This document shows, one piece after another, positions 2,596 to 59,486 of a stretch of DNA of 64,000 nucleotides (position 1 is the stretch's first letter; each line of letters starts with the position of its first letter). Both the position numbers and the translations under genes were made by a program. Origin of the DNA: Octopus sinensis (Eukaryota); assembly GCF_006345805.1 (NCBI RefSeq), contig NC_043021.1:8928001-8992000 (forward strand), in the 5' to 3' direction. The notes below the pieces were generated by a model that had not been told where the DNA came from, made no database searches, and saw nothing but the letters and a program-made list of their open reading frames with translations.

Positions 2596-3230
2596 TGTGA
2601 GTGTATGTGTGTGTGTGGTGTGTGTGTGTGTGTGTGTGTGTTTGAGTTAGTGTGTTTATGTTTGTGTTAGTCTACCACCACCACCACCACCACTACTTGA
2701 CAACCGCTGTTGGTTTGTTTACGTTCGCATAACATAATGGTTCGTCTCTTTTGCCGACTGTTGTAATAGGTCACAGGCTTTTTTAAAAACAAAATAATAA
2801 GTACTGGAGTTGATTTGTTCGATTGAAATCTGAAATGCTGTGCCCCAGCTTAGCCGCGGTCCCATGACTGAAACGAATCAAATCTAAACACGCATCCAGA
2901 TACGTAAATACGACCCCCGTGTCTCTTATGAATATTTAAGCATTCCTTTTCATTCACATCTATCATACATGATCGATTACCTTCGTCGAATTTCACTCTG
3001 ATCTTTCAGTACGAATATACCAGGGCTACATTTTTATTTCCAATTAGGTAAATTCAATGCAGTTTCAAACCGTAAATTATTAAAGCAAAAATCGTAAATA
3101 GAGGTTGAATGAAAATGAATTTGGAAACTTTATGTGTGCGTACGAAACTAACGCAGAAATGTTAATGTGGCTTTAAATTACAATTACATGGTGAATCTTA
3201 AATATTTCAAGCATAAAGTTCACTGAATAC

Positions 3231-3396
3231 CTGCAAATTCACACTGCTCGTCATCTTCAGCACTGAATAAGCTTTCATAAGCATTCGGGTGATTGATAGC
3301 ATTGTACGGATTCTCTTCATCATCGCTGCCCGTAATTATAGGTTGCGTATCATCTGCTCTTTCTTCTTCAACGTCATCCCACCAGCTATTCTCCAT
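3231..3396 (-). CDS. Candidate first coding exon, acidic peptide MENSWWDDVEEERADDTQPIITGSDDEENPYNAINHPNAYESLFSAEDDEQCEFA
   Basis: ATG at 3396 follows an in-frame TAA. There are 55 open codons plus 1 nt, ending at a possible donor GCAG|GTATTC. Sequence is non-repetitive and protein-like, but no homologue is recognised. Confidence 0.35.
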
Positions 3397-3643
3397 TTAT
3401 ACCAAGCAAACATTCGAAATTCCACATTTCTTCAAATGATTCGATAATCATGTCAGCTTTTCAAGTCCTGCCGTTTATTAACTATCCGTTCAGACAGATC
3501 AAAGGCAGATTTATGATCTGCACTTCTCTGATACACAATCTTGTATCTCTGAAGTACTGAAGAAAATAAGCAATTTCAAAAATTAAATTTTATCCTTTGG
3601 TGTAGTTTTTCTTTAAAAAAAAAAAAATAAAATAATAATAATA

Positions 3644-3679
<36 letters not shown>

Positions 3680-4194
3680 CGGTTTTTAATTTAGTTTCAT
3701 TTGCGATACATGAAAGAACTAAAATACACCGGATGGCCTTTCTTCTTCGAATTCCGATAACAAATTGCTGAAACGCTTAAACTTTATCATCTCGATCAGC
3801 TCCTTGGCAACTTTTGTACAATTCTACATTCTCTGATATTTCCCGAATCTTGGGCCTTAAAATCCATGATTCCGTGTGTTCTTTGCTAGTTTGTTTGGTT
3901 GGGGGGTTTTTTTCTGTTATCTTGTTTGTTGCTGTTGGGTTGTTTTTTTTTTTTATTCCTTTAGTGCAGATTCAGATGGCTTTACGAGTTAAATATTTTC
4001 CATCTTGACGACTTCCGATTACCACCAACTCGACAATCGTTTTCTCCAATCGTAGCCACTTGCAAGCCTGATCTCTATCAGCACAATTTATTTTCGCATC
4101 AGTCACTCACAACCATTTTACAAATAACACCAAATCCTCAAGCTGCCACACAGTTGCCTTTTCAGCAACAGGAATAACTTTTAGCTTGAGTACT

Positions 4195-7440: not shown

Positions 7441-7972
7441 AAATATTCTGTACATCTTTTTCTTCACTCTCTGACTTAAGCTTCAAACTTGCAAACCCGC
7501 ATTGCCTTAATCTAAAAAGTATTGTCACCCTTATGGCAACTGACCCCCAGGGGAACACTACGTGTATAATAGCTAACAATTATTGTTTTAATCTGCATAG
7601 GTGCTGCCTACTTTGCCTACACGCCTATCTATGCGTTACGTCCCTCGCCATTTATAGATATACGTGTGGGGGAGGAAGAGGACCGAATTTATCTTTAATT
7701 TTATAAACTATTTCATTTTTTTTTTCTTGTGGCCATTACAATTTTTGCAGCAAATATTCTGTAGCAATAACATTCGTTTAATTTTTACTATAATTAATGT
7801 ATAAATAACTTATTGGAATCTTTTGTAAAAAAAAACTAGCCGAAGATGGCTTCTAAAATTAATGTTCTATTTTTAGACGATGGACAATGTGTTTAATATT
7901 AAAGAATATTTCTTTTAATGAAAGACGTTCTAATATTCCGCCAAGATAGTAACTTGTCCTTGGTATGACTTT

Positions 7973-8072
7973 NNNNNNNNNNNNNNNNNNNNNNNNNNNN
8001 NNNNNNNNNNNNNNNNNNNNNNNNNNNNNNNNNNNNNNNNNNNNNNNNNNNNNNNNNNNNNNNNNNNNNNNN
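7973..8072. other. Assembly gap (100 N)
   Basis: Run of exactly 100 N, typical of a scaffolding spacer. Confidence 0.98.
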
Positions 8073-9095
8073 GTGTTTGTAAATTGCTCTTTTAATAGGG
8101 ACGATTGGGTTTTTTTTTTTGGTGAACAATTTCTCACAAGGCTTACTGGAAGAACAAGAAAAAACGAAAAACGAAACAGAAAACAAACAAACAAACAAAA
8201 ATGGTCGTCCATACTGCTTCTCTGCTCCATGTTCATGACTGCTCAGTGTAGTAAAAAGTCTGTATATGTGTTCTGGCGAAGAAAGGAAAGTACTTAAGTT
8301 TTAAAAACATATGTCCCTGTTTTTTTTTTTAAATATATTCATATATTCATCGTTAGATCCTAGATTAATTCTTAAAACAGAATAATTCTTTCAAAGACGC
8401 CCTCCCCATACAACAACAACAACAACAACAACGACAAAAGCAACACCAACAATATACGAACAAATGAATAGATAAATATTTACCAAGTTCTTAGCAAATT
8501 TCTGCTCTTCTTTGTTCAATCTATTTCCTTTTGAATTCTTTAAGAATGACACATTTTTCAAGACTTCGTATCTCAGTTATTTGCCTTCTTCTCTCTCTCT
8601 CTTTCTCTCTCTCTTTTCCCTCCAACAACGGTTTGACTGTGTTTTCCCCCTTTCATAACACACATTACTCTCACATACCGCTCTACATTGCTGTTGTTGC
8701 TTTCACATACTTTTCTAACATACCACTCTCTTCGTTGCATTAACATCTCACTCAACATAGATCTATTTTACTCTCTCAAACAATGCAGTATATTTACTAC
8801 ACAATGTATTTTGAGCAAATGCACTTACGGTACTCCAATATCAAAATGGAGGTTTCACTCAACGCTGCCCTCACACTACACTCTCTCATTGTCTTCACAT
8901 AACCACTCAATATTTCTTTTGCACTACACTCCATACTGCTTTCATCTTACCACTCCATATTGTTCCACATTGCCTTTTGTCCTCTCGGAATCGATAACGA
9001 AGTGCAAGTATTGTTGCTGTTGTTGTTGTGTTGGTGGTGGTGGTGAGTTTCATCTAATCGACTGATCTCCTCCTTACTGGCCTTATGCCTAAAAC

Positions 9096-9667: not shown

Positions 9668-9986
9668 TTTCTGTCTTTTTGTCGAACCGCTAAGTTACGG
9701 GGACGTAAACACACCAGAATCGGTTGTCAAGCGATGTTGGGGAGGGGGGACAAACACAGATCTCGGTGGAATTTGAACTCAACGTAAAAACAGACAAAAC
9801 ACACACACACATATATACATATATATGACCGGCTTCTTTCAGTTCCTGTCTACCAAATCCACTCACAAGGCTTTGGTCGGCCCGAGGCTATAGCAGAATA
9901 CACTTGCCCAAAGTTCCACGCAGTGGGACTGAACCCGGAACCATGTGGTTGGTAAGCAAGCTACTTACCACACAGCCACTCCTGCG
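9668..9986 (-). mobile_element. CORE-type SINE (family A) with a short family B fragment inside
   Basis: Reverse complement of the family A head at 9830-9986 and body at 9668-9750. CTCGGTGGAATTTGAACTC at about 9762-9780 is family B. Confidence 0.75.
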
Positions 9987-9994
9987 CCTAAGAC

Positions 9995-10583
9995 AATACA
10001 TACATACATACATACATACATACATACATACATACATAAGTACATACATAAGTACGTACGTACATACATACATACATACATGCATACATACATACATACA
10101 TACATACATACATAATACATACATACATACATACATACGTACATACATACATACATACATACATACATACGTACATACATACATACATACATACATACAT
10201 ACATACATACGTACATACATACATACATACATACATACATACATACATACATACATACGTACATACATACATAATACATACATACATACATACATACATG
10301 CATACATACATACATAAGTACATACATAAGTACGTACGTACATACATACATACATACATACATACATGCATACATACATACATACATACATGCATGCATA
10401 CATACATACATACATACATACATACATACATACGTACATACATACATAATACATACATACATACATACATACATGCATACATACATACATAAGTACATAC
10501 ATAAGTACGTACGTACATACATACATACATACATGCATACATACATACATACATACATAATACATACATACATACATACATAA

Positions 10584-10616
<33 letters not shown>

Positions 10617-10675
10617 GCATACATGCATACATACATACATACATACATACATAAGTACGTACGTACATACATACT
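9995..10675. repeat. (TACA)n array with variant units
   Basis: Directly visible tetranucleotide repeat. Confidence 0.97.
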
Positions 10676-10959
10676 GTCATACATACAGACAGACAGATAG
10701 GCAGACATGCACACATATATGAATTACTGAAATTTCTTGGCTTACGATGCTATGACATATCGTTTACTAAAGACAGCATTTATTTTCCCAATTATTCACA
10801 CACAAAACAGACTCGTGTGCAATCAGAAGCTGCCTTCTTGTGACAAGAGCCTAAACAGTAAACAAAACCCGAAAAGACCGAGGAAGGGGTGTGAGTTAGA
10901 CAGGGAGGAGTAAGAACGAGGTACACCGCTGGCTGATGAGGGTGGTGTCAGGGTGGAGT

Positions 10960-15000: not shown

Positions 15001-15365
15001 CATACAAGGTGGAAATCAACTCGTGACAGAATAAAACCACTTCTTAAACCCATCTCACTTCAAGAAACACCTCACATTTGGTTTTGCCATCGCTCACGAC
15101 GTCTCATGTGGTTCCAAAGGCCTGCAAGGGACTAACAAGTCGTTCCACAACGATTATAAGTTATTCCTCAAGCAGGACCCTACAATGCCGGGTGGGTTCA
15201 CTGGCTGACACAGATTCTGCTACATAATATACACCAGAGAACATGCTAGATATCACGTTGGTAGACGAGACAAGCTGACAATTTATGGAAGCTCTAAATC
15301 CTGGTGTTGATTTTCATTCTCGCGCTTCCAGAAAAGATGCATTTTCATAATTTTTGTATACTTAC

Positions 15366-15443
15366 TATGAGATGTAGCCTACTTCAGCAACCATTTTTTT
15401 TATCAGCTGCTCGTGATAATTAGTAGCTGACTCTGTGTCAACA
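15366..15443 (-). CDS. Candidate 78-nt internal exon (VDTESATNYHEQLIKKMVAEVGYIS)
   Basis: TTAATCTGCCAG| acceptor, |GTAAGTA donor, length divisible by 3, open in phase 2; no partner exons confirmed. Confidence 0.25.
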
Positions 15444-15984
15444 CTGGCAGATTAAGATTTTTTGTTGTGTAAAATTAAACGCTTCTTAAACCTTTAAAAC
15501 CAGCATTTACTCGATAGAAGATGTTTTTCATTATACGATTCACCTTCCTTTTTCTGCAAACCATGAGAAAAATTTTTGGATTTGGTTTTTAATTACCATC
15601 GTGATTATCGGCACGATAGTAATTATATCGGTAATTATGTTGTCTGAAACTCGATCCATTAACCCAAGAACCGTTTCATTTTAAGCATCGCGTTAGATCT
15701 ATGAAAAAATAGGGTTGGAGTAGGATATTTGACGTGATTTTTTCTTTCTCGTCAAATATCGTTTCGCTATAAATAATGTTGTAAACTTCACTGTTTTGGC
15801 AATGTGGCTGATTTTTCCTTCCGTATTGAGCCTTCTTGAAACATCAACCTTACTAACCATTGTAATCCTTTATTGGTTTTTTCGTACTACTGCCTTGGAT
15901 TGTACGTGGTGGTTTCTGTCTAGACATCTTACCGGGTTCATGGGCACTTTGCCTCTTGTACTTCTCACGTAAGCCATGTTTATT

Positions 15985-17749: not shown

Positions 17750-18570
17750 TGTACGTATGTATGCATGCAAGTATGTATGTATGTATGCATGCAAGTATGT
17801 ATGTACGTATGCATGTATGCATGCATGCATGTATGTATACATGTATGCATGTATGCATGTATGCATGTATGTATGCATGTATGTATGCATGCAAGTATGT
17901 ATGTATGTATGTATGCATGTATGTATGTATGTATGCAAGTATGTATCTATGCATGTATGTATGCATGTATGTATCTATGCATGTATGTATGCATGTATGT
18001 ATGTATGTATGTATGCAAGTATGTATGTATGTATGCATGTATGCATGTATGTATGTATGTATGTATGTATGCATGCATGTTTGTATGCATGTATGTATGC
18101 ATGTATGTATGTATGCATGTATGTATGCATGTATGTATGTATGTATGTATGTATGTATGTATGTATGCATGCAAGTATGTATGTATGCATGCAAGTATGT
18201 ATGTATGTATGTATGTATGTATGCATGCATGCAAGTATATATGTATGTATGCATGCAAGTATGTATGTATGCATGCATGCAAGTATATATGTATGTATGC
18301 AAGTATGTATGTATGTATGCATACATGCAAGTATGTATGCATGTATGTATGCATGCAAGTATGTATGTATGTATGTATGCATGCATGCAAGTATATATGT
18401 ATGTATGCATGCAAGTATGTATGTATGTATGCATGCAAGTATATATGTATGTATGCATGCATGCAAGTATATATGTATGTATGCATGCAAGTATGTATGT
18501 ATGTATGTATGTATGTATGCATGTATGTATGTATGTATGTATGTATGTATGTATGCATGTATGTACGTGT
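17750..18570. repeat. (TATG)n/(CATG)/(CAAG) variant tetranucleotide array
   Basis: Directly visible; source of the 170-295 aa artefact ORFs. Confidence 0.97.
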
Positions 18571-18760: not shown

Positions 18761-18766
18761 TTTATT
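18761..18766 (-). promoter_or_regulatory. Candidate polyadenylation signal AATAAA overlapping the cyclin double stop (TAATAA)
   Basis: Plus strand TTTATT at 18761-18766; minus reads GTT TAA TAA AAC. Confidence 0.4.
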
Positions 18767-19658
18767 AAACGTTTGAATAGTCAATCTGAGAAATACAGTT
18801 GTTTTCTTCTCCATAGTATCTCGCTTGCGCTGAACTATATTTCGTTTCTTTAGAAGCTGCTTTGAGTAACTCCAGCATACGCTTATGAAGAGATATTAAC
18901 TCCTTCTCTTCTCCAGTGTAAGGAGTTAGAATTGATAAATCAGAAAGCCATTCATGATGAAGCTTCAAAGCTATTATTCCTGTGTGGAGAGCAGCTGTCG
19001 CTATGAGGCTCGGTTTGTATTGAGATTTGACACAGATAATGTCATCATATTGCGATAGTTCTAATATATAATTGGTTATACAATACAAGTCGTGAGTCGC
19101 TTTTAATTTGAGAATAACCCGGAAGTAATTAAAGAAAGTGTAAGGAGTAATGATTAATTTCCTAATATTGAAATGTTCATAGATCAAACTGCGTATCTTT
19201 TTAAGCTTTTCTTTTGACGATTCGGGGTCGACGCTTGACACTAAATTCATAAGCTCCTGCGCATCAGAAGTTTTCCCTTTGTATACCATATCGAATGAAA
19301 CCGAGAGACAACTCGTCGCGATGCATTGCAGTTTTTTTAGGGGAATCCGAGGTAATTTTTTGCAAGACATGAATAAATCAAATAATGAAACAGCTAGGTA
19401 AAAGACTTCCTTAGAAGCCTTGTAACGATCGACGCAAGCTAACATCCAATTGATCAAAGTCAGACGATCATCTTTTCTGAAATCATGGCACTCGAAATAA
19501 TTCTTAGCTTTCTTCTGATGATTTTCAGCTTCATATAGAGCAGATAACTTGAGATTAACAAGATTAAGTGACATTGTTACTCCCATAAAATGTCCAAATT
19601 TCTTCAGCTTATTTTTTAAAGTTTCATCAAACGGTTGAAAACTCGGTTTAAGGTTCAC
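18765..19658 (-). CDS. Divergent cyclin A/B-type protein (cyclin N and C boxes) in one uninterrupted exon
   Basis: Aligns by eye without gaps at the anchors of the cyclin box: LYEAE..NYF, DRLTLINWM (MRAILVDWL), EVFYLAVSLFDLF (ETLHLAVNYIDRF), KLQCIAT (KLQLVGT), ITPYTF (PTxxxF), NYILELSQYD, QYKPSLIATAAL (YxPSxIAxAA), W..L...TPY, KYS..QARY. The track start is a GTG overlapping a TTTCAG acceptor; first ATG is at 19586. Confidence 0.92.
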   Translation of the reverse strand: MNLKPSFQPFDETLKNKLKKFGHFMGVTMSLNLVNLKLSALYEAENHQKKAKNYFECHDFRKDDRLTLINWMLACVDRYKASKEVFYLAVSLFDLFMSCKKLPRIPLKKLQCIATSCLSVSFDMVYKGKTSDAQELMNLVSSVDPESSKEKLKKIRSLIYEHFNIRKLIITPYTFFNYFRVILKLKATHDLYCITNYILELSQYDDIICVKSQYKPSLIATAALHTGIIALKLHHEWLSDLSILTPYTGEEKELISLHKRMLELLKAASKETKYSSAQARYYGEENNCISQIDYSNV

Positions 19659-19811
19659 TGAAAGCTCTTAACTGATTATATATTACAGAGTCTTTTATGA
19701 CGTAGTTGAAACGTGACAATTATTTTTACGGTGTGATAGTTTTTTTCTTTTTAAATAAAAACAAACTTCACTAAATTAATATTTCGATAATGAAACGAAA
19801 TTGTATTTTTT

Positions 19812-20392
19812 TATTTCTTATTTCTTTATTGCCCACAAGAGGATAAACATAGAGGGGACAAACAAGGACAGACAAACGGATTAAGTCGATTACATCGACT
19901 CCAGTGCGTAAATGGTACTTATTTAATCGACCTCGAAAGGATGAAAGGCAATGTCGACTTCGGCGGAATTTGAACCCAGAACGTAGCGGCAGGCGAAATA
20001 CCTATTTCTTTACTACCCACAAGGGGTTAAACATAGAGTGGACAAACAAGAACAGACAAACGGATAAAGTCGATTATATCGACCCCAGTGCGTAACTGGT
20101 ACTTATTTAATCGACCCTGAAAGGATGAAAGGCAAAGTCGACCTCGGTTGAATTTGAACTCAGAACGTAGCGGCAGCCGAAATACCTATTTCTTTACTAC
20201 CCACAAGGGGCTAAACATAGAGTGGACAAACAAGGACAGACAAACGGATTAAGTCGATTATATCGACTCCAGTGCGTAACTGGTACTTATTTAATCGACC
20301 CCGAAAGGATGAAAGGCAAAGTCGACCTCGGCGGAATTTGAACTCAGAACGTAGCGGCAGCCGAAATACCTATTTCTTTACTAATATAGAGC
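19812..20392 (-). mobile_element. Trimer of the 184-bp SINE body (family B)
   Basis: Three tandem units CCCACAAG...GAACTCAGAACGTAGCGGCAG...AAATACCTATTTC, immediately upstream of the cyclin. Confidence 0.88.
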
Positions 20393-22372: not shown

Positions 22373-22394
22373 TAAAGAACGTATCACGTAATAG

Positions 22395-22730
22395 CAACGT
22401 TTTCATTACTAAAATAACTGGCGCTCTGTCGGTTATGGCGATAAGGGTTTCATTTGACCCCATCAACGGAACAGCTTTCTCGGGAAATTAACGTGCATGT
22501 GGCTGAGCACTCCACACACATACGTACCCTTAACGGGTACTCTACAAACACGCGTACTCTTAACAGTTTGACACAAGATGTGACAAGGCTGGCCCTTTGA
22601 AATACAGGTTGTACTCATTGTTGCCAGCTGAATGGACCGGAGCAACGTGAAATAAAGTGTCTTGCTCAAGGACGCAACGCGCGGCCGGGAATTGAACTCA
22701 CGATCTTACAAACGTGAGCCGAATACCCTA
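22395..22730 (-). mobile_element. tRNA-headed SINE related to 1040-1325
   Basis: GGGAATTGAACTCACGATC (B box on minus) near 22688-22706; shared body motif. Confidence 0.65.
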
Positions 22731-22819
22731 AATAAATAAATCAAACAATGTCACATACTCAAGGATTTTACTAGCTCTAATCACGAGCTAAGTCACAACT
22801 GTTATAAGTACGAGATAAA

Positions 22820-23055
22820 CCTATTTCTTTACTACCCACAAGGGGCTAAACACAGAGGGGACAAACAAGGACAGACAAACGGATCAAGTCAATTACACTG
22901 ACCCCAGTGCGTAACTGGTACTTAATTTATCGACCCCGAAAGGATGAAAGGTGAAGTCGACCTCGGCGGAATTTGAACTCAGAACGTAACGGCAGACGAA
23001 ATACGGCTACGCATTTCGTCCGGCGTGCGAACAATTCTGCCAGCTCGCCGCCTTA
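22820..23055 (-). mobile_element. Family B SINE monomer with head
   Basis: One 184-bp body plus the head GCATTTCGTCCGGCGTGCGAAC...GCCAGCTCGCCGCCTT. Confidence 0.85.
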
Positions 23056-23296
23056 TAAGTACAAGATAAACCACTATAATAATACTCTTGTGTTTTTCTT
23101 CGTTACAACATATGAATACGAAAGGAAGGGGTGATAGATGAACGGTCACTGTAATTTCATTGGTTTGAACTATTAGTAATTCCAGTAACCGATTTTTTTA
23201 TACACTCATTACCGCAATAGATGTGTATATATAAATAGGTGCTTGGAAGTGTGCAAGTATGAGTGAATGTCTCACACACACACACCCATATATATA

Positions 23297-28175: not shown

Positions 28176-28517
28176 CATTGACGGGCTTCTTCCTGTTTCA
28201 GTCTACCAAATTCACTCACAAGACTTTGAACGGGCTGGTGCTATTGTGGACGCATTCTGAAAGTGCTTTGTAGTGGTACTGAACCCAAGACCACATGGTT
28301 GAGAAGCAAGCTTCTTACCACACAGCCACGATATAGATGTTGTACTTGTCATAGAATGTGTGTTGGTACATGTACACACATGCATGTGGTGTATATCCCC
28401 ACCACTTGTCTATTTTAGCAAGCCCCTAAATTTTAAACGTAATACTGTTCAACGCTAAACATTGCCCTACAATTTTTAATGAAAATTTTCCTGGTCTTTC
28501 TTCCTCGTACAATTTTA

Positions 28518-29083
28518 TTGGGTTGTCCGGAGAGTTCGTGCCGATTTTTAAAGGAAAGAAAAAGGTCAATAAATACTTGCCATTACATTTTAAATCAGCC
28601 AAATAGGAACCATTTTGTTGCACAATGCATCTCCATCTTTCCTTTAACTTGAAAATACCCTCTTCCCAGAATTGAGGTGGCTTCATGGCAAAGAATTCAT
28701 CAAGGTATCTTTTTACTTCATCCAAGGAATTGAAATTTTTACCATTAAGACTATTCTGCAGAGACTTGAATAAGTGGAAATCCGAAGGAGCAATATCTGG
28801 TGAATATGGAGGGTGGGGTAACACATCCCAGCCGAGCTGCAGCAATTTTTGTCTGGTTCCCAAAACATCAAGTGCCGAAAATGAACTTTCTTATCTTCCA
28901 TTTTAAAGGGTTACAGAATTAACACAGATTATAGGAACATAAACCGTCTTCCACGAAAAGATAGCTTAAACTGTGCTCTAAATGGAGGTGTAGTCAAATC
29001 CTATTTTATGGACTCGACCATGTTGTAAAATAAGTCGAAAGGTAAGCTACTATAAATCGGCACGAACTTTCCGGACAACCCAA
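28518..29083 (-). mobile_element. Internally deleted mariner (DD34D) element, 566 bp, 30-bp TIRs, TA TSD
   Basis: TIR TTGGGTTGTCCGGA(G/A)AGTTCGTGCCGATTT at both ends with 1 mismatch, flanked by TA. N-terminus MEDKKVHFRHLMFW is fused out of frame to C-terminal WDVLPHPPYSPDIAPSDFHLFKSLQN. Confidence 0.93.
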
Positions 29084-30460: not shown

Positions 30461-32799
30461 ATATGATGAGAAACAGAGGTTGCGAAAGATAAGAGATGAG
30501 TAGCAGAGATGAATAACGGATACATAGAAACCGGAAGAGAGAGGAAGAGAAGTGAGAGGAGTAAGTGATAAAAAGAAAATGAGAAACTGACTGAAGAAGA
30601 GAACAGAGGGGAAAAAAATTAGAAAGGATAGAGTGAGAGAGAGAGGAATAGGAATTGATAAGGAGACGAGGAAAGAGAGGCCATGAAAGACGAAGTGCTT
30701 GAGTGAATGAGTGGGTAATCGAGTGAGTGAGCAAGTGTGTGTGTGTGTGTGTATGAAGGAGAGAATGAAATCAAGATGAAATGATGGCACACAGTAATGG
30801 AGAAGGCGGTAAAAAGAGTGGAAACGATAAAGGCATGAATGATGATACGGTGGGAATTGATGAACAGGGATGAACGAGATAAGGGAAGGAGAAGAAAGAT
30901 GAGGTAAAGGTAGGAAGTAAAAAGACGAGCCGAGATGATGGATTGGATATAGAAAGTGAGAGAACGAGAGAGAGAACGGAAGAGAGAGGTTGAAGGAGAG
31001 AAAAAGAAAATGAGTGTGAAAGCAGATATGATGAATCAGAAGAAATATGAAGCCCGGTGTGCCGAAGATAAAGCATCTCACTTTTCAGAAATCTTCTAAA
31101 ATGAGTCAGCAGACCTCATTTTTGCTTTAAAATCTATGTCAATGGTGTGTTTTTGAGTTAGCTACTTTTAATTTATTTTACTATCATTATTATTTTATTT
31201 TTATTTATTTTAGCTTTATTCTTCTCTTCTCGCGTGTTAAGTGAGTGTGTTTTATAATTACATTGCTAAATCTTTTCAGCACTGAATTCATCACAAAAGC
31301 CAAGCAGAGAGAGAAAATGGCGAGAGCTACCAAAAGCAAAAACAGGAATGAAAGACAAGACCATTATAAATGAAGCAATGCTAAAGGCGTGGGGGGTGGA
31401 GGGAGGTGAGGCGGTGGTGGTGGTGGTGGATTCTGATATGTAGTTGCAATAATACAGCATGGAATGGAAATGGTATGTTGTGATATAGTGTATTGCAGCA
31501 TGGTATGGCGCGGCATTTGCATGGAGTGGTATGTCTGTCATAGTATATACTTAGCAAAGCGTTAGAGAGTCTTGATTTCATCAGAGCCGTAATGGCGGTG
31601 GAACGGACGGAATCTAAGATTTTTCGTCACATATGGAAGAGATAGGGGTTAAAGAGAAAGAGAGAAAGAGAGAGAAAGATGGCGGAGAGAGGGAAATTAA
31701 AGCTTTACGCCTGCCCCTTGCCTTCTTCTTTCTCGTTTGTTCGTTTATCTTACTGGTTTTCCACTTAAGCGTCTTCCTTACACTTACTTACCCCCCTCCC
31801 CCACCATCACCACCACCACCACCACCAACAGTAGCAATAACAATATCATCATCATCATCATCATCATCATCATTATCACCAAAACCATCAAGCACCACCG
31901 CCGCCGCCACCACCACCACCACCTGTACCATTACCATCCCCACCCTACCCACGCTGCCATCGCCACCACCATGTTACCACCGCCAGTACAATTTCCTCTT
32001 TGTTTTGTATTTCCTCCTTCTCCGACATCCCCCGCAACGACCGTACCTCACCTCTCCTCGGTACCTCCAACCACTGCCACCACCACCATAACCACCACCA
32101 CCACCACCAACACCATCACCCACCACCATCGCTGCTACCGTCACTAATCTCACCTTTCTCCTCCTTCACATTTCATCTGTTTCCTCTTTCTCCTCTTACT
32201 TCTCCTCCTCTTCCTTCTTCCCATTAATACCACGGCCATCTCCTCCTCCTCCTCCTCCTCCTCCCTCCCTCCCCGCTGTTCATTCCTGTTCTTTCTTCTT
32301 TGCTGTTGTTATAGTCTCTGCTGCTTTCCTTCTTTCTCCTCTTCCCTTCCCTCTGTGCCACCACCAACTCCACCACCACCACCACCACCACTACCATCTC
32401 TAGCTTATCACCTCCTACTCTCTCCTATTTATCTTTCTCCATTCAAGCCTCTCTCTCTCTCTATTGTTCATACTGTTGCCGTTGTTGTTGTTGTCGTTGT
32501 TGTTGTTGGCGTCGTTGTGGTTGTTGTTGTTAATCTCATTCTTTTCATTCTTCTCATTATCTCATTCCTCCTCGCGAACAACAACCCCCACCACCACCAC
32601 CACCACAACCACCACCACCACCACCACCAGCGATACCGCCATCACCAACAACATGTCCATGGTCTTTCTAAGCCAGAAGATCATTTTAAGTCAGTCTTCA
32701 CACTCAGACAGTTTCACAATGAATTCTTGTTATCAGTGGGCAGTTTCATTTTCTTCTGCATCCCCGACTATTTTCTCATCTTTTGTTCTTGTAGTTGCG

Positions 32800-33348
32800 C
32801 ATACAAACAAACATACAAACAAACATACAAACATACATACATACATACATACATACATACATACACACACATACATACATACATACATACATACATACAT
32901 ACATACATACATACATACATACATACATACATACATACATACATACATGCCATACATACATACATACATGCACACATACATACATACATACATGCATACA
33001 TACATGCATGCATACATACATACATACATGCATGCATACATACATACATACATACATACATACATACATACATACATGCATGCATACATACATACATGCA
33101 TGCATGCATACATACATACATACATACATACATGCATGCATACATGCATACATACATGCATGCATACATACATACATACATACATGCATGCATACATACA
33201 TACATACATACATACATGCATGCATGCATACATACATACATACATACATGCATGCATGCATACATACATACATACATACATACATACATGCATGCATGCA
33301 TGCATGCATACATACATACATACATACATACATACATACATACATACA

Positions 33349-33380
<32 letters not shown>
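32800..33380. repeat. (TACA)n/(TGCA) array
   Basis: Directly visible. Confidence 0.97.
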
Positions 33381-33381
<1 letters not shown>

Positions 33382-33636
33382 TTCTGTGTGTATGTGTTGT
33401 TTTTTGTCTTAAGTTTTTTCTGTTTTCTGTTTTTTCATCTTTCATACATTTTTTTCTGTTGTGGAAATGGCAGAAGTTCGAGAGATGGAAACACAAGACC
33501 AAGACCAAGAGTGAAAGAAAAGGTGATGGTGGTGGTGGTGGTGGTGGTGTTGGTGGTATAGAGAGATGGCGGTAGAAAGGTTTTGCAGAAATGCTTCGAA
33601 TCACTTGGCACTTTCAACCACCAATGTCCTCTCCTT

Positions 33637-42191: not shown

Positions 42192-43456
42192 TTGGATTGG
42201 CAAGAGCGTAATTTTGGTTTTTTAGTGTGAAATAAAAGTCATTTTTTTCATACAAAGAATGAACTTTAATCAATCATATTTTCCTAATATTTTATTCGAT
42301 GACCTTTTGCCATCTTTCTGGTAACTTCATGATTCTGCGTCCGTGGAACTTCCTGTCCTTAGCCAAAAACTGAAGCAAGTGCGATTTCAGGTCATCATCA
42401 TTATTGAAAGTTTTACCATTCAAAGAATCTTGCAAACTTTGAAATAAATAGGAATCTGATGGTGCAAGGTCAGGGCAATATAGTGGATGTGAGATCACTT
42501 CCCAACCAAGCTCCAGTAATTTTTCATGAGTCAGCAAAGACGTGTGTGGTCTAGCGTTGTCATGGTGGAACACGGTTTCTTTACGATTTGCCAATTCTGG
42601 TTGTTTTTCTTTTATTGCTTCTTCCAGTTTCATTAATTGTTGACAGTAAACATCTGAATTGATTTTTTGGTTCCTTGGAAGCAGCTCAAAAAGCACAACA
42701 CCTTTGCAATCCCACCAAATTGACAGCATGACATTTTTTGGATGCAATTCAGCTTTCGATGTGGTCTGTGCTAGTTCATCACGCCTGAACCATGATCGCT
42801 TTCGATTGATGTTATTGTAAACTATCCACTTTTCACCACCAGTGATGATTCGTTTCAAAAAAAGGGTCAATTTCATTGTGTTTGAGATTCATATCGAAAA
42901 TATTGATTCGTTGTGTTAAGTGAATCTCTTTCAATTTATGGGGAACACAAATATCAAACTTCTTAACGAGTCCAAGATATTTTAAGTGATTTTCAATTGT
43001 TGTGTGTGATACATTCAACCCCTCTGCAATCTTTCACACAGTTATATGACAATCAGATTAAATTATGGCTTCGATTATGTCGACCAGGACGTTGGTCATC
43101 TTTGAGTGAAAAATCTTCAGAACAGAATTTTTAAAACCATTTCTGACATGTGGTTTATGTTAAGCAATCAACACCATAAACTTCACATATCTCTTTGTGA
43201 GCCCCAGCAGCTTTCTTGCCTTTCTGGAAATAAAAAAAAAAGCAAAATATGGCGAAAATGTTCGTTTTTGCACTCCATGTTAAAATTGACTCTGAACTAA
43301 CGGCAGTAAACAAAATTACGCGCAATTTGCTTCTAAAGTAAGCCAAAAGTAACGGCTATCAAATGTCAACACGAAAAAGTCGTAACACTGACAAAAGTCA
43401 TAAAAAAAATCGTAACTCTCTTTGAGAAGAACAAAATTATTTTCTTGCCAACCCAA
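42192..43456 (-). mobile_element. Full-size (about 1265 bp) degenerate mariner (DD34D) transposon
   Basis: Imperfect TIRs TTGG(A/G)TTGGCAAGA...TAATTTTG. Frameshifted transposase with HTTIENHL (HTH), IITGGEKWIVY, FHHDNARPH and HPLYCPDLAPSDSYLFQSL. Confidence 0.93.
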
Positions 43457-58128: not shown

Positions 58129-58139
58129 TTATCTATCTA

Positions 58140-58369
58140 TCTATGTACGTACGTATGTATGTATGTATGTATGTATGTATGTATGTATGTATGTATGTAT
58201 GTATGTATGTATGTATGTATATACACGCGCGTGCATGTGCATATATAAATACATACATACATAGATGCATACATACGAACTTACATACACACATACGCAT
58301 ATATATGTGTGTGCATGCATGTATGTAAGTATGCATGTATGTATGTATATGTGTATGTATGTATGTATG

Positions 58370-58403
<34 letters not shown>

Positions 58404-59245
58404 TGTATGTATGTATGTATGTATGCATGTATGTATGTATGTATGTATGTATGCATGCATGTATGTATGTATGTATGTATGTATGTATGTATGTATGCAT
58501 GTATGTATGTATGCATGTATGTATGCATTATGTATGTATGCATGTATGTATGTATGTATGTATGCATGCATGTATGTATGTATGTATGCATGTATGTATG
58601 TATGTATGTATGCATGTATGTATGTATGTATGTATGTATGCATGTATGTATGTATGTATGCATGTATGTATGCATGTATGCATGTATGCATGCATGTATG
58701 TATGATGTATGTATGTATGTATGTATGTAGTATGCATGTATGTATGTATGTATGTATGTATGCATGTATGATGTATGTATGTAGTATGTATGTATGCATG
58801 TATGTATGTATGTATGTATGCATGTATGTATGCATGTATGTATGTATATGTATGTAGTATGTATGTATGTATGTATGCATGTATGTATGTATGTAGTATG
58901 TATGTGTATGCATGTATGTATGTATGTGCATGTATGTATGTAGTATGTATGTATGTATGTATGTATGTATGCATGTATGTATGTAGTATGTATGTATGTA
59001 TGTATGCATGTATGCATGTATGTATGTATGTATGTATGTATGCATGTATGTATTTGTATGTATGTATGTGTATGTATGTATGCATGTATGTATGTATGTA
59101 GTATGTATGTATGTATGTATGTATGTATGCAGTATGTATGTATGTATGTATGTATGCATGTATGTATGTATGCATGTATGTATGTATGTATGTATGTATG
59201 TATGTATGTATGTATGTATGCATGCATGTATGTATGTATGTATGT
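58140..59245. repeat. (TATG)n/(CATG) array, about 1.1 kb
   Basis: Directly visible. Confidence 0.97.
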
Positions 59246-59486
59246 TCTACTTGCCACCCCGTGTATCTCCCGCCCATTCTCGATCTCTTTTCATTTATTT
59301 CCTCACACACCCATATATATTGTAAATACAAAAACGTTAAGTACACAACGCAAACACAGGCGCGCACACACGCACACACACACCTACACAATTATACGCA
59401 ACATTATGCATACATACATACATACATACATGCATACATATATATTTACATATGTATCTTTCGCTCTCTCTATCTCTCTATCTGTC

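What the first reader, a model, noticed from the sequence alone, without database searches (positions are those of the whole stretch)
19191..19292. Cyclin with a reciprocal charge swap of the near-invariant CDK-binding Lys/Glu pair (K266 to D, E295 to R)
Seen: anchored on KLQ, the residue at the cyclin A2 K266 position is Asp123 (codon 19290-19292). Anchored on the PT/ITP motif, the E295 position is Arg156 (19191-19193). The R211-D240 pair (R65/D94, same 29-residue spacing), W217 (W71) and Q254 (Q111) are retained. Established: K266 and E295 are among the most conserved cyclin residues; they pair with each other and contact the CDK N-lobe next to the PSTAIRE helix. Inference: swapping both charges looks like compensatory evolution of a protein still under selection, not decay. 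It may bind an atypical or co-evolved CDK, or act as a CDK-independent or decoy cyclin. The acidic E220/E224 equivalents near the RxL groove are also lost (A74, R78).
Basis: partly seen in the sequence, partly recalled or inferred. Interest (0 to 1): 0.85.

Follow-up and report, generated by a model that had tools for sequence, protein, structure and literature searches.

The report
Octopus-only cyclin lacking CDK-binding residues
This is an intact, selectively maintained, intronless Octopus vulgaris gene for a short cyclin-A-like protein from a small cephalopod-restricted family in which every member has lost the residues that normal cyclins use to grip their kinase, so the Asp/Arg "charge swap" is a late, lineage-specific state and not a conserved compensated pair.

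Summary
The codons are as stated: 19290-19292 is GAT (Asp) and 19191-19193 is CGC (Arg), on the minus strand. The ORF is a real cyclin (Cyclin_N + Cyclin_C; AF2 pLDDT 94; best fold match cyclin A2).

Arg156 at the E295 position is robust. Asp123 at K266 is register-dependent. Four sequence methods delete the "SK" and align Asp123 with E268. Helix register in two AF2 models puts Asp123 where K266 sits in space.

The true start is M29, giving 269 aa.

The gene belongs to a single-exon family of at least four groups (Octopus, Argonauta, two unidentified taxa). All members lack K266, E295 and F304.
- K266 position: D/E/D | T/T/I | D | S.
- E295 position: R/R/H | F/F/L | Y/Y/H/Y | Y.

Arg therefore arose late, by TAC→CAC→CGC. 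This is not a conserved reciprocal swap.

The window's orthogroup is under purifying selection (dN/dS 0.26, p≤4e-6). Two paralogue groups evolve near dN/dS 1, with tandem copies and one stop-bearing copy.

Most likely function: a cyclin-fold protein uncoupled from canonical CDK activation. A private CDK partner is not excluded.

The parts
18765..19574 (-). True CDS: 269 codons plus the TAA stop, single exon, cyclin-A-derived core-only cyclin (group G1 of the family).
   Evidence: ORF. The start at M29 is conserved in O. bimaculoides and species X. It is 90% and 80% identical to the orthologues P0001 and P0002. AF2 gives pLDDT 94.1.
19575..19658 (-). The 28 extra 'codons' of the mechanical GTG ORF. 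This is 5' leader, not coding.
   Evidence: the M25 ATG is ATT in both other species. One- and two-base indels (plus one of three bases) break the frame. The nucleotides themselves are conserved, as expected for a UTR.
19188..19541 (-). Cyclin_N domain (ORF residues 40-157).
   Evidence: Pfam PF00134, E = 5.6e-14.
18783..19148 (-). Cyclin_C domain (ORF residues 171-292).
   Evidence: Pfam PF02984, E = 1e-9.
19290..19292 (-). GAT = Asp123 (Asp95 of the real protein). It is the sequence homologue of cyclin A2 E268 and probably sits at the K266 position in space.
   Evidence: Codon. Gapped alignments. Helix register.
19293..19298 (-). Ser121-Phe122. This is the junction where canonical cyclins carry two extra residues, including the invariant Lys (..A-[SAC]-K-F..).
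   Evidence: The same 2-residue gap appears in MAFFT, hhalign and two HMMER alignments. The Lys column is 22/22 in canonical cyclins and empty in 10/10 family members.
19191..19193 (-). CGC = Arg156 (Arg128 of the real protein), at the cyclin A2 E295 position.
   Evidence: It is the 8th residue of a5 in both models. The family column reads R,R,H,F,F,L,Y,Y,H,Y,Y.
19164..19166 (-). Ile165, at the cyclin A2 F304 position, the third residue of the CDK-binding triad.
   Evidence: canonical F in 19/22; family I,I,I,Y,Y,H,G,G,G,F.
19673..19727 (-). Conserved core promoter block holding a CRE-like ACGTCA (19698-19703) and TATATAA (19676-19682), about 100-130 nt upstream of the ATG.
   Evidence: It is near-invariant across three species while the sequence further upstream is unalignable. 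Promoter function is an inference.
18761..18766 (-). AATAAA polyadenylation-type signal overlapping the stop codon.
   Evidence: Sequence. It is conserved in O. bimaculoides and is ATTAAA in species X. Function is inferred.

Best explanation
The locus is an intact, intronless Octopus vulgaris gene. Its CDS is 18765-19574 on the minus strand and encodes 269 aa.

The protein is a core-only cyclin: an N-terminal helix plus two cyclin folds. It has no N-terminal degron region. Among solved cyclins it is closest to cyclin A.

It is one of at least four paralogue groups of a cephalopod-restricted family. The family spread by DNA-level duplication of a single intronless founder, carried with its promoter and 5' leader. 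The founder was probably a 5'-truncated retrocopy of an A-type cyclin.

The founder had already lost the canonical CDK-gripping triad.
- The Lys266 column went through a 2-codon deletion, which slid the old E268 into its place.
- E295 and F304 went by substitution.

In this orthogroup the E295 position later moved Tyr -> His -> Arg.

Most likely mode of action (inferred): the protein keeps a stable cyclin fold and a family-conserved a1 groove (R65, W71, M72, A74, C75). It uses these to dock partner proteins. It no longer binds and activates a CDK in the canonical way. It would act as an adaptor, competitor or decoy, as the cyclin domain of cyclin F does, rather than as a kinase activator.
For: Gene reality and selection.
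- Pfam Cyclin_N and Cyclin_C both hit.
- AF2 gives pLDDT 94.1 and pTM 0.92, with an N-terminal helix and two five-helix folds.
- The best Foldseek match is cyclin A2, TM 0.79-0.84.
- The family profile scores cyclin A2 at 81 bits, B1 at 60, D at 50-53 and E at 42.
- Orthologues are intact in O. bimaculoides and a third species. dN/dS is 0.26-0.27, with binomial p = 4e-6 and 1e-8.
- Group G4 has dN/dS 0.13. G2 against Argonauta gives 0.24-0.28.

Family.
- An exhaustive profile search of 1.84 billion representatives finds only 5 proteins below 1e-30. Scores then drop to ordinary cyclins at about 1e-17.
- Every copy whose locus was fetched is a single exon.
- 5' leader motifs are shared across groups.

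Loss of the CDK signature.
- The Lys and Glu columns are invariant in 22/22 canonical cyclins.
- In the family these columns are empty, or R/H/F/L/Y.
- The F304 column is I/Y/H/G/F and the L299 column is Y/S/M/I/L/N.
- The would-be CDK face is therefore variable among paralogues, whereas a conserved new interface would be expected to stay fixed.

Literature.
- The Lys-Glu pair hydrogen-bonds the backbone of the loop before PSTAIRE. It is conserved from cyclins A, B, D, E and T to Pho80 (PMC3590450).
- Triple-Ala at K266/E295/F304 is used to stop CDK binding. [quoted passage not shown]

Stepwise origin of Arg: codons TAC, CAC and CGC.
Against: - No binding data exist. A cyclin-CDK interface is large, and an Asp/Arg pair could still hydrogen-bond backbone groups.
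- The N-terminal helix, which contacts the CDK in cyclin A, is retained.
- The canonical substrate-docking patch is also altered (M210->D/N, E220->A). A docking role therefore rests only on within-family conservation.
- I have no expression evidence. The Logan contigs could be genomic.
- The retrocopy origin is inferred from intronlessness and N-terminal truncation only. I found no poly(A) relic or target-site duplication and identified no parent gene.
- The structural placement of Asp123 rests on DSSP helix boundaries. It was not measured from coordinates.
Confidence: 0.55

Rival explanations
1. Re-wired CDK partner. The protein still binds a CDK through a remodelled interface. In this orthogroup an inverted Asp123-Arg156 pair replaces Lys/Glu. 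The partner could be private, such as a co-evolved or atypical CDK paralogue, as proposed for Oikopleura CDK1d with cyclin Ba/b.
For: - By helix register, Asp123 and Arg156 fall at the K266 and E295 positions in space, so they should be neighbours.
- Acid plus base or His is kept in all three G1 orthologues.
- Selection on G1 is purifying.
- The N-terminal helix and the overall A-type fold are retained.
- There is a precedent for co-evolved interface changes in PMC8832800.
Against: - The pair is absent in the other paralogue groups (T/F, I/L, D/Y, S/Y). The other triad and interface columns (F304, L299, P272) vary across the family. No common new interface is therefore visible.
- The human triple mutant at these positions abolishes binding, and cyclin F, which lacks them, binds no CDK (PMC12356897).
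- No atypical octopus CDK was looked for or found here.
Confidence: 0.28
2. A decaying retro-pseudogene or neutrally drifting ORF whose odd residues are simply damage.
For: - It is intronless and sits alone in repeat-rich DNA.
- Sister groups G2 (O. vulgaris versus O. bimaculoides) and G3 show dN/dS of 0.66-1.6 (about 1 on average).
- One G3 copy carries an in-frame stop.
Against: - This orthogroup has dN/dS 0.26 with p <= 4e-6.
- The ORF is intact in three species at dS up to 0.37.
- A promoter block and a poly(A) signal are conserved.
- All structural-core invariants are retained, and the fold prediction is very confident.
Confidence: 0.04
3. A virus-derived cyclin (endogenous viral element) captured in the octopus genome.
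For: The ORF is short, intronless and degron-less, like herpesviral and giant-virus cyclins. Viral cyclins do appear among the fold hits.
Against: - Viral matches are much weaker (TM 0.51-0.67, E >= 1e-6) than cellular cyclin A2 (TM up to 0.84).
- There are no viral-type ORFs in the window.
- Orthologous positions are conserved between octopus species, with flanks that align.
- The family has multiple chromosomal paralogues.
Confidence: 0.02

Closest known systems
Cyclin A (A-type mitotic/S-phase cyclins; PDB 1FIN and others)
   Same: - Same architecture: an N-terminal helix plus two cyclin folds.
- Best sequence-profile hit (81 bits) and best fold hit (TM 0.79-0.84).
- The structural-core invariants R211, D240, W217, Q254, the PS..A motif and the W of the C-terminal fold are retained.
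   Different: - No N-terminal region of about 170 aa carrying a destruction box.
- The K266 column is deleted, E295 is Arg, and F304 is Ile.
- In the MRAIL patch, Met is Asp and E220 is Ala.
- There is a 6-residue insertion that lengthens a4.
- The gene is intronless.
Cyclin F cyclin domain (a CDK-independent cyclin)
   Same: [quoted passage not shown] Its cyclin fold is used for partner or substrate docking.
   Different: - Cyclin F is a large F-box protein in an SCF ligase, whereas the octopus protein is only the 269-aa cyclin core.
- Cyclin F keeps a working hydrophobic patch for Cy/RxL motifs. Here that patch is altered.
Oikopleura dioica cyclin Ba/b with CDK1d (lineage-specific, co-evolved cyclin-CDK pair)
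   Same: Lineage-specific duplication of mitotic-type cyclins, with changes at interface and salt-bridge positions. The authors interpret this as an exclusive pairing (PMC8832800).
   Different: In Oikopleura the partner CDK paralogue is known and also altered. No octopus partner is known. Here the altered positions are not conserved across paralogues.
Viral cyclins (gammaherpesvirus v-cyclins, giant-virus cyclins)
   Same: Short, degron-less, intronless cyclin cores.
   Different: v-cyclin keeps the Lys-Glu pair in its CDK6 complex (stated in PMC3590450). The structural match to the octopus protein is clearly weaker than that of cyclin A2.

Membership tests
Cyclin superfamily (A/B-type) | Two tandem five-helix cyclin folds (Cyclin_N + Cyclin_C) | tested here: met
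   Pfam E = 5.6e-14 and 1e-9. AF2 pLDDT 94.1. Foldseek cyclin A2 TM 0.79-0.84.
Cyclin superfamily (A/B-type) | Structural-core invariants (R211-D240 pair, W217, L253/Q254, PS..A, W in the C-terminal fold) | tested here: met
   R65, D94, W71, L110/Q111, P216/S217/A220 and W237 all match columns that are 20-22/22 in canonical cyclins.
CDK-activating cyclins | Conserved Lys (A2 K266) and Glu (A2 E295) that hydrogen-bond the CDK loop before PSTAIRE, plus F304 | tested here: not met
   Lys column is empty, or Asp by helix register. Glu is Arg. Phe is Ile. The same loss is seen in all 10 intact family members. Role of these residues: PMC3590450 and PMC12356897.
CDK-activating cyclins | Physical binding to and activation of a CDK | not testable with these tools
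   Needs co-IP, a kinase assay or multimer modelling.
Mitotic A/B cyclins | N-terminal destruction box or KEN degron region | tested here: not met
   The protein starts about 2 residues before the N-terminal helix. Canonical relatives carry 100-250 extra N-terminal residues.
Mitotic A/B cyclins | MRAIL hydrophobic patch with an acidic E220 for RxL docking | tested here: inconclusive
   R, W, L253 and Q254 are kept. Met is D/N and the E220 column is Ala/Ser. The replacement residues are conserved within the family, so an altered groove may persist.
Cyclin F-like CDK-independent cyclins | F-box, Skp1 binding and SCF membership | tested here: not met
   Only Cyclin_N and Cyclin_C pass Pfam's own cut-offs. 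The 269 aa are fully accounted for by the cyclin core.
Processed retrogene | No introns; poly(A) relic and target-site duplications; identifiable intron-bearing parent gene | tested here: inconclusive
   Intronless in all species and paralogues. No A-tract follows the 3' end. The parent gene was not identified. The nearest non-family hits are a mix of protist and plant cyclins.
Viral cyclin / endogenous viral element | Closest relatives viral; viral gene neighbourhood | tested here: not met

The most novel reading that the evidence does not exclude
The family is a cephalopod innovation: a rapidly duplicating set of cyclin-A-derived cores that have been unplugged from the common CDK pool. Each group either pairs privately with a co-evolving kinase or other partner, or acts as a decoy. 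The inverted Asp-Arg pair in this orthogroup would then serve as an orthogonal lock. Regulation would run through a conserved CRE/TATA mini-promoter of the kind typical of germline-expressed intronless genes. The near-neutral or positive dN/dS in the tandem G3 cluster would reflect reproductive or conflict-driven evolution.
Probability: 0.12. Interest if true: 0.7.

Novelty: new variant of a known kind. Interest (0 to 1): 0.42.

Why it matters
The Lys-Glu pair is among the most conserved features of CDK-binding cyclins, from yeast Pho80 to human cyclins. A whole family that keeps a very well-formed cyclin-A fold under purifying selection after losing that pair, and F304 with it, is a natural experiment. 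It shows what a cyclin fold can do without canonical kinase binding.

It also adds a concrete, testable case of lineage-specific gene-family birth in octopods: intronless genes, duplicated together with their promoter, with mixed purifying and near-neutral evolution.

For annotation, the automatic names 'G2/mitotic-specific cyclin-A' and 'cyclin-B2-1-like' overstate what these proteins are likely to do. Several public gene models in the family are truncated or stitched across tandem copies.

Tried and rejected
- Tandem paralogue in the window: tblastn of family proteins against the 64 kb finds only the one copy.
- Viral origin: rejected.
- Alternative compensating residues. K127/K129 and E161 ('YEH' resembles 'MEH') could replace the missing Lys/Glu under other registers. 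They are conserved only inside this orthogroup, and no alignment method places them there.
- Measuring the Asp123-Arg156 distance or superposing on 1FIN: model coordinates are not exposed to scripts. I used DSSP helix boundaries from two models as a proxy.
- Complex prediction with a CDK: the structure tool takes one chain and returns no interface metrics, so I did not attempt it.
- Parent cyclin: the best non-family hits are a taxonomic mix (protist cyclin B, plant cyclin A1-4, gregarine-like), so best hits do not identify a parent. Only the PDB ranking A2 > B1 > D > E points to A-type.
- Literature: no paper mentions the gene IDs or the SRA/ENA runs. A text search on octopus, cyclin, testis and intronless gave nothing relevant.
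- Taxon of species X (SRR11869391/84) and of group G4 (ERR12921337/40, SRR9969974, SRR8281680, ERZ21867824): not identified. G4 flanks share no repeats with the octopus loci held here.
- Expression: the Logan contigs end in repeats or lack poly(A) tails, so they cannot be taken as transcripts.

Full report
**What is at the coordinates**

The minus strand carries a 297-codon mechanical ORF, 18765..19658, starting at a GTG. The product hits Pfam Cyclin_N (E = 5.6e-14) and Cyclin_C (E = 1e-9). By phmmer it is closest to cyclin A2 among solved structures.

The window is Octopus vulgaris, assembly GCA_951406725.2, chromosome OX597838.1 near 19.57 Mb. No second cyclin copy lies in the 64 kb. The rest of the window is microsatellites, SINE-like repeats and a mariner-type transposase relic.

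**Gene model**

- In O. bimaculoides and a third species ("species X", Logan contigs), the ATG at M25 is ATT, and indels of one, two and three bases separate the GTG from M29.
- The ATG at M29, in the context ACAATG, is conserved.
- The NCBI orthologue also starts there.

The real CDS is therefore 18765-19574, 269 aa, and the two residues are D95 and R128 in real numbering.

Upstream there is a block that is nearly invariant in three species. It holds a CRE-like ACGTCA (19698-19703) and TATATAA (19676-19682). Sequence further upstream is unalignable. An AATAAA overlaps the stop codon and is conserved. Promoter and poly(A) functions are inferences. The gene is a single exon in O. vulgaris and O. 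bimaculoides.

**Fold**

AlphaFold2 with a 32-sequence alignment gives mean pLDDT 94.1 and pTM 0.92. The model has an N-terminal helix followed by two five-helix cyclin folds. Foldseek against the PDB ranks cyclin A2 chains from CDK2 complexes first (TM 0.79-0.84) and cyclin B1 next (0.81). Viral cyclins match clearly worse, at TM 0.51-0.67. A family profile scored against PDB sequences gives cyclin A2 81 bits, B1 60, D1/D3 50-53 and E1 42. I call it a cyclin-A-derived core.

**The family**

An exhaustive profile search of 1.84 billion representative proteins finds only five below 1e-30. The next hits, at about 1e-17 to 1e-20, are ordinary cyclins. With the word-indexed searches and locus look-ups, I define four groups.

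| Group | Members | Notes |
|---|---|---|
| G1 | this gene; O. bimaculoides LOC106882405 (90% identity); species X (80%) | the window's orthogroup |
| G2 | O. bimaculoides 'G2/mitotic-specific cyclin-A'; an intact but mis-annotated O. vulgaris copy; Argonauta hians | — |
| G3 | O. bimaculoides LOC106879796; three tandem copies within 20 kb in O. sinensis | the middle O. sinensis copy has a single in-frame TAA |
| G4 | two unidentified taxa, from Logan and ENA | 81% identical to each other |

Every copy whose locus was fetched is a single exon. O. bimaculoides G2 and G3 lie 112 kb apart on one chromosome. The 5' leaders of G1, G2 and G3 share short motifs (TTTTCACC.TT, AGTTTCG.T) and CRE-like sites. 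This argues that one intronless founder was duplicated at the DNA level together with its promoter. That the founder was a 5'-truncated retrocopy of cyclin A is an inference. I found no poly(A) relic and no parent gene.

**The two residues**

In 22 canonical A/B-type cyclins, the Lys (A2 K266) and Glu (A2 E295) columns are invariant.

Arg156 = E295 is robust.
- phmmer, MAFFT, hhalign and profile-versus-PDB all agree.
- The spacing from the conserved Asp (A2 D283) is 12 residues in both proteins.
- It is the 8th residue of helix a5 in both the octopus model and a cyclin-A-like control model.

For K266 the answer depends on what is meant by "position".
- All four sequence methods place a two-residue gap exactly at the 'SK' of ..IASKFEEIY.. 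That gives S121=A264, F122=F267, D123=E268, V125=I270 and Y126=Y271.
- Conservation fits this register. Columns 122 and 125 are conserved hydrophobic, and columns 123 and 124 are variable.
- The helix itself is not shortened. In both AF2 models a3 starts 4 residues before the invariant Gln. It runs 15 residues past the Gln in octopus and 14 in the control.
- In a continuous helix, Gln+12 is Asp123 in octopus and the Lys in the canonical cyclin.

The simplest reconciliation is a 2-codon deletion that slid the old acidic E268 into the spatial slot of K266. A compensating 6-residue insertion lengthened the a3-a4 loop and a4 (12 versus 7 helical residues). I could not verify this on coordinates, which are not exposed.

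**Is it a compensated reciprocal swap?**

The family says no. These are the states at the two positions.

| Group | K266 position | E295 position |
|---|---|---|
| G1 | D, E, D | R, R, H |
| G2 | T, T, I | F, F, L |
| G3 | D, D, D, D | Y, Y, H, Y |
| G4 | S | Y |

- Both canonical residues were already gone in the common ancestor.
- The E295 position is mostly aromatic or aliphatic.
- The codons TAC (Tyr), CAC (His) and CGC (Arg) form a single-step series that ends in Arg only in the O. vulgaris/O. bimaculoides G1 lineage.
- The third residue of the experimentally used CDK-binding triad, F304, is I/Y/H/G/F in the family. L299 and P272 are also unconserved.
- K127/K129 and E161, which might substitute under other registers, are conserved only within G1.

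**Selection**

Values are Nei-Gojobori estimates.
- G1 gives dN/dS 0.26 (O. vulgaris versus O. bimaculoides, dS 0.19) and 0.27 (versus species X, dS 0.37). The excess of synonymous changes is significant, at p = 4e-6 and 1e-8.
- G4 gives 0.13.
- G2 against Argonauta gives 0.24-0.28, with dS above 1.
- G2 between the two Octopus species gives 0.97.
- G3 comparisons give 0.66-1.6. Neither the G2 nor the two G3 comparisons tested is distinguishable from neutrality.

The family as a whole shows birth-and-death turnover and fast evolution.

**Mechanism**

Shown:
- a stable cyclin-A-like fold;
- retention of all structural-core invariants (R65-D94, W71, L110/Q111, P216/S217/A220, W237);
- loss and between-paralogue variability of the CDK-contact triad;
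- absence of any N-terminal degron region;
- an altered MRAIL patch (Met->D/N, E220->A/S). The replacement residues WM.AC are conserved in the family.

From the literature:
- The Lys-Glu pair hydrogen-bonds backbone atoms of the loop preceding the PSTAIRE helix. It is conserved in A, B, E, T, D, viral cyclin and Pho80 complexes (PMC3590450).
- Alanine substitution of K266/E295/F304 equivalents is used to prevent CDK binding. Cyclin F, which lacks these residues, does not bind CDKs (PMC12356897).

Inference: the protein most likely no longer activates a CDK in the canonical manner. It would work as a docking, adaptor or decoy cyclin fold through its family-conserved a1 groove and C-terminal-fold surface. 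I put this at about 0.55.

The main rival, at about 0.28, is a re-wired, possibly private CDK pairing. In that case the neighbouring Asp123 and Arg156 would form an inverted pair, in the spirit of Oikopleura CDK1d with cyclin Ba/b (PMC8832800). The pseudogene and viral-capture readings are essentially excluded for this copy.

**Novelty**

The proteins exist in NCBI as 'uncharacterized', 'G2/mitotic-specific cyclin-A' or 'cyclin-B2-1-like' models. No paper in the held library mentions them.

Cyclin-fold proteins without CDK-binding residues are known; cyclin F is an example. This is therefore a new variant of a known kind and not a new category. The specific headline of the finding, a reciprocal compensatory charge swap, does not survive comparison with paralogues.

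The interesting residue of the finding is the family itself: restricted to cephalopod-type sequences, intronless, duplicated with its promoter, with the CDK signature lost in every member, and with mixed purifying and near-neutral evolution.

Noticed in passing
window 19673-19727 (-); also L001, L003, L002, L006, L011, L012, L007 upstream regions: A compact conserved promoter-like block sits upstream of the cyclin, with a CRE-like ACGTCA/TGACGT site followed by a TATA box. CRE-like sites and shared 5'-leader motifs recur upstream of paralogue groups G2, G3 and G4. This suggests the family was duplicated together with its promoter and may be CREB/ATF-regulated.
   Followed up: partly
L011 (O. 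sinensis CM016862.1) 3001-3813, 15142-15954, 22376-23203: Three tandem single-exon G3 cyclin copies lie within 20 kb. The middle copy has one in-frame TAA at codon 35 but is otherwise full length. The NCBI model XP_029634929.2 spans the whole 20 kb and appears stitched across copies.
   Followed up: partly
L012 (O. vulgaris OX597817.1) 2797-3600: An intact 268-aa single-exon G2 paralogue is present, whereas the annotated protein (P0006, 197 aa) is a truncated, spliced model with an unrelated C-terminus. This is probably an annotation error.
   Followed up: partly
G2 and G3 paralogues (L002/L012; L006/L011): dN/dS is about 1 (0.97 for G2 between O. vulgaris and O. bimaculoides; 0.66-1.6 within G3) despite intact ORFs. 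dS for G2 (0.068) is about a third of the G1 value (0.19) for the same species pair. Relaxed constraint, positive selection or gene conversion could each explain this; I did not resolve which.
   Followed up: partly
window 19819-20383: A 184-bp unit is repeated 3.1 times in tandem (93% matches) immediately upstream of the cyclin promoter. The unit recurs elsewhere in the window and in the O. bimaculoides locus, so it looks SINE-like. ARAGORN finds no tRNA in the window.
   Followed up: partly
window 17750-18565 and many other places (e.g. 9888-10716, 32733-33604, 58133-59391): Very long (TGTA)n / (TGTATGCA-like)n microsatellites generate most of the long mechanical ORFs in the window. One of 204 units starts about 200 bp downstream of the cyclin stop.
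   Followed up: no
window 42292-42876 (-) and 28426-28863 (-): Mariner-type transposase relics. The first hits Pfam Transposase_1 at 2.5e-28. The second has the typical C-terminal motif by eye but gets no Pfam hit. A similar Transposase_1 ORF lies 1.5 kb upstream of the G4 cyclin in L014.
   Followed up: partly
window about 7950-8100: A run of N (an assembly gap) shows up as X's inside ORF 7859-8236.
   Followed up: no
L007-L010, L014: Group G4 cyclins come from unidentified taxa (Logan runs ERR12921337/40, SRR9969974, SRR8281680; ENA assembly ERZ21867824, a 226-kb contig). Their flanks share no repeats with the Octopus loci, so the family may extend beyond Octopus and Argonauta. dN/dS between the two G4 sequences is 0.13.
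   Followed up: partly
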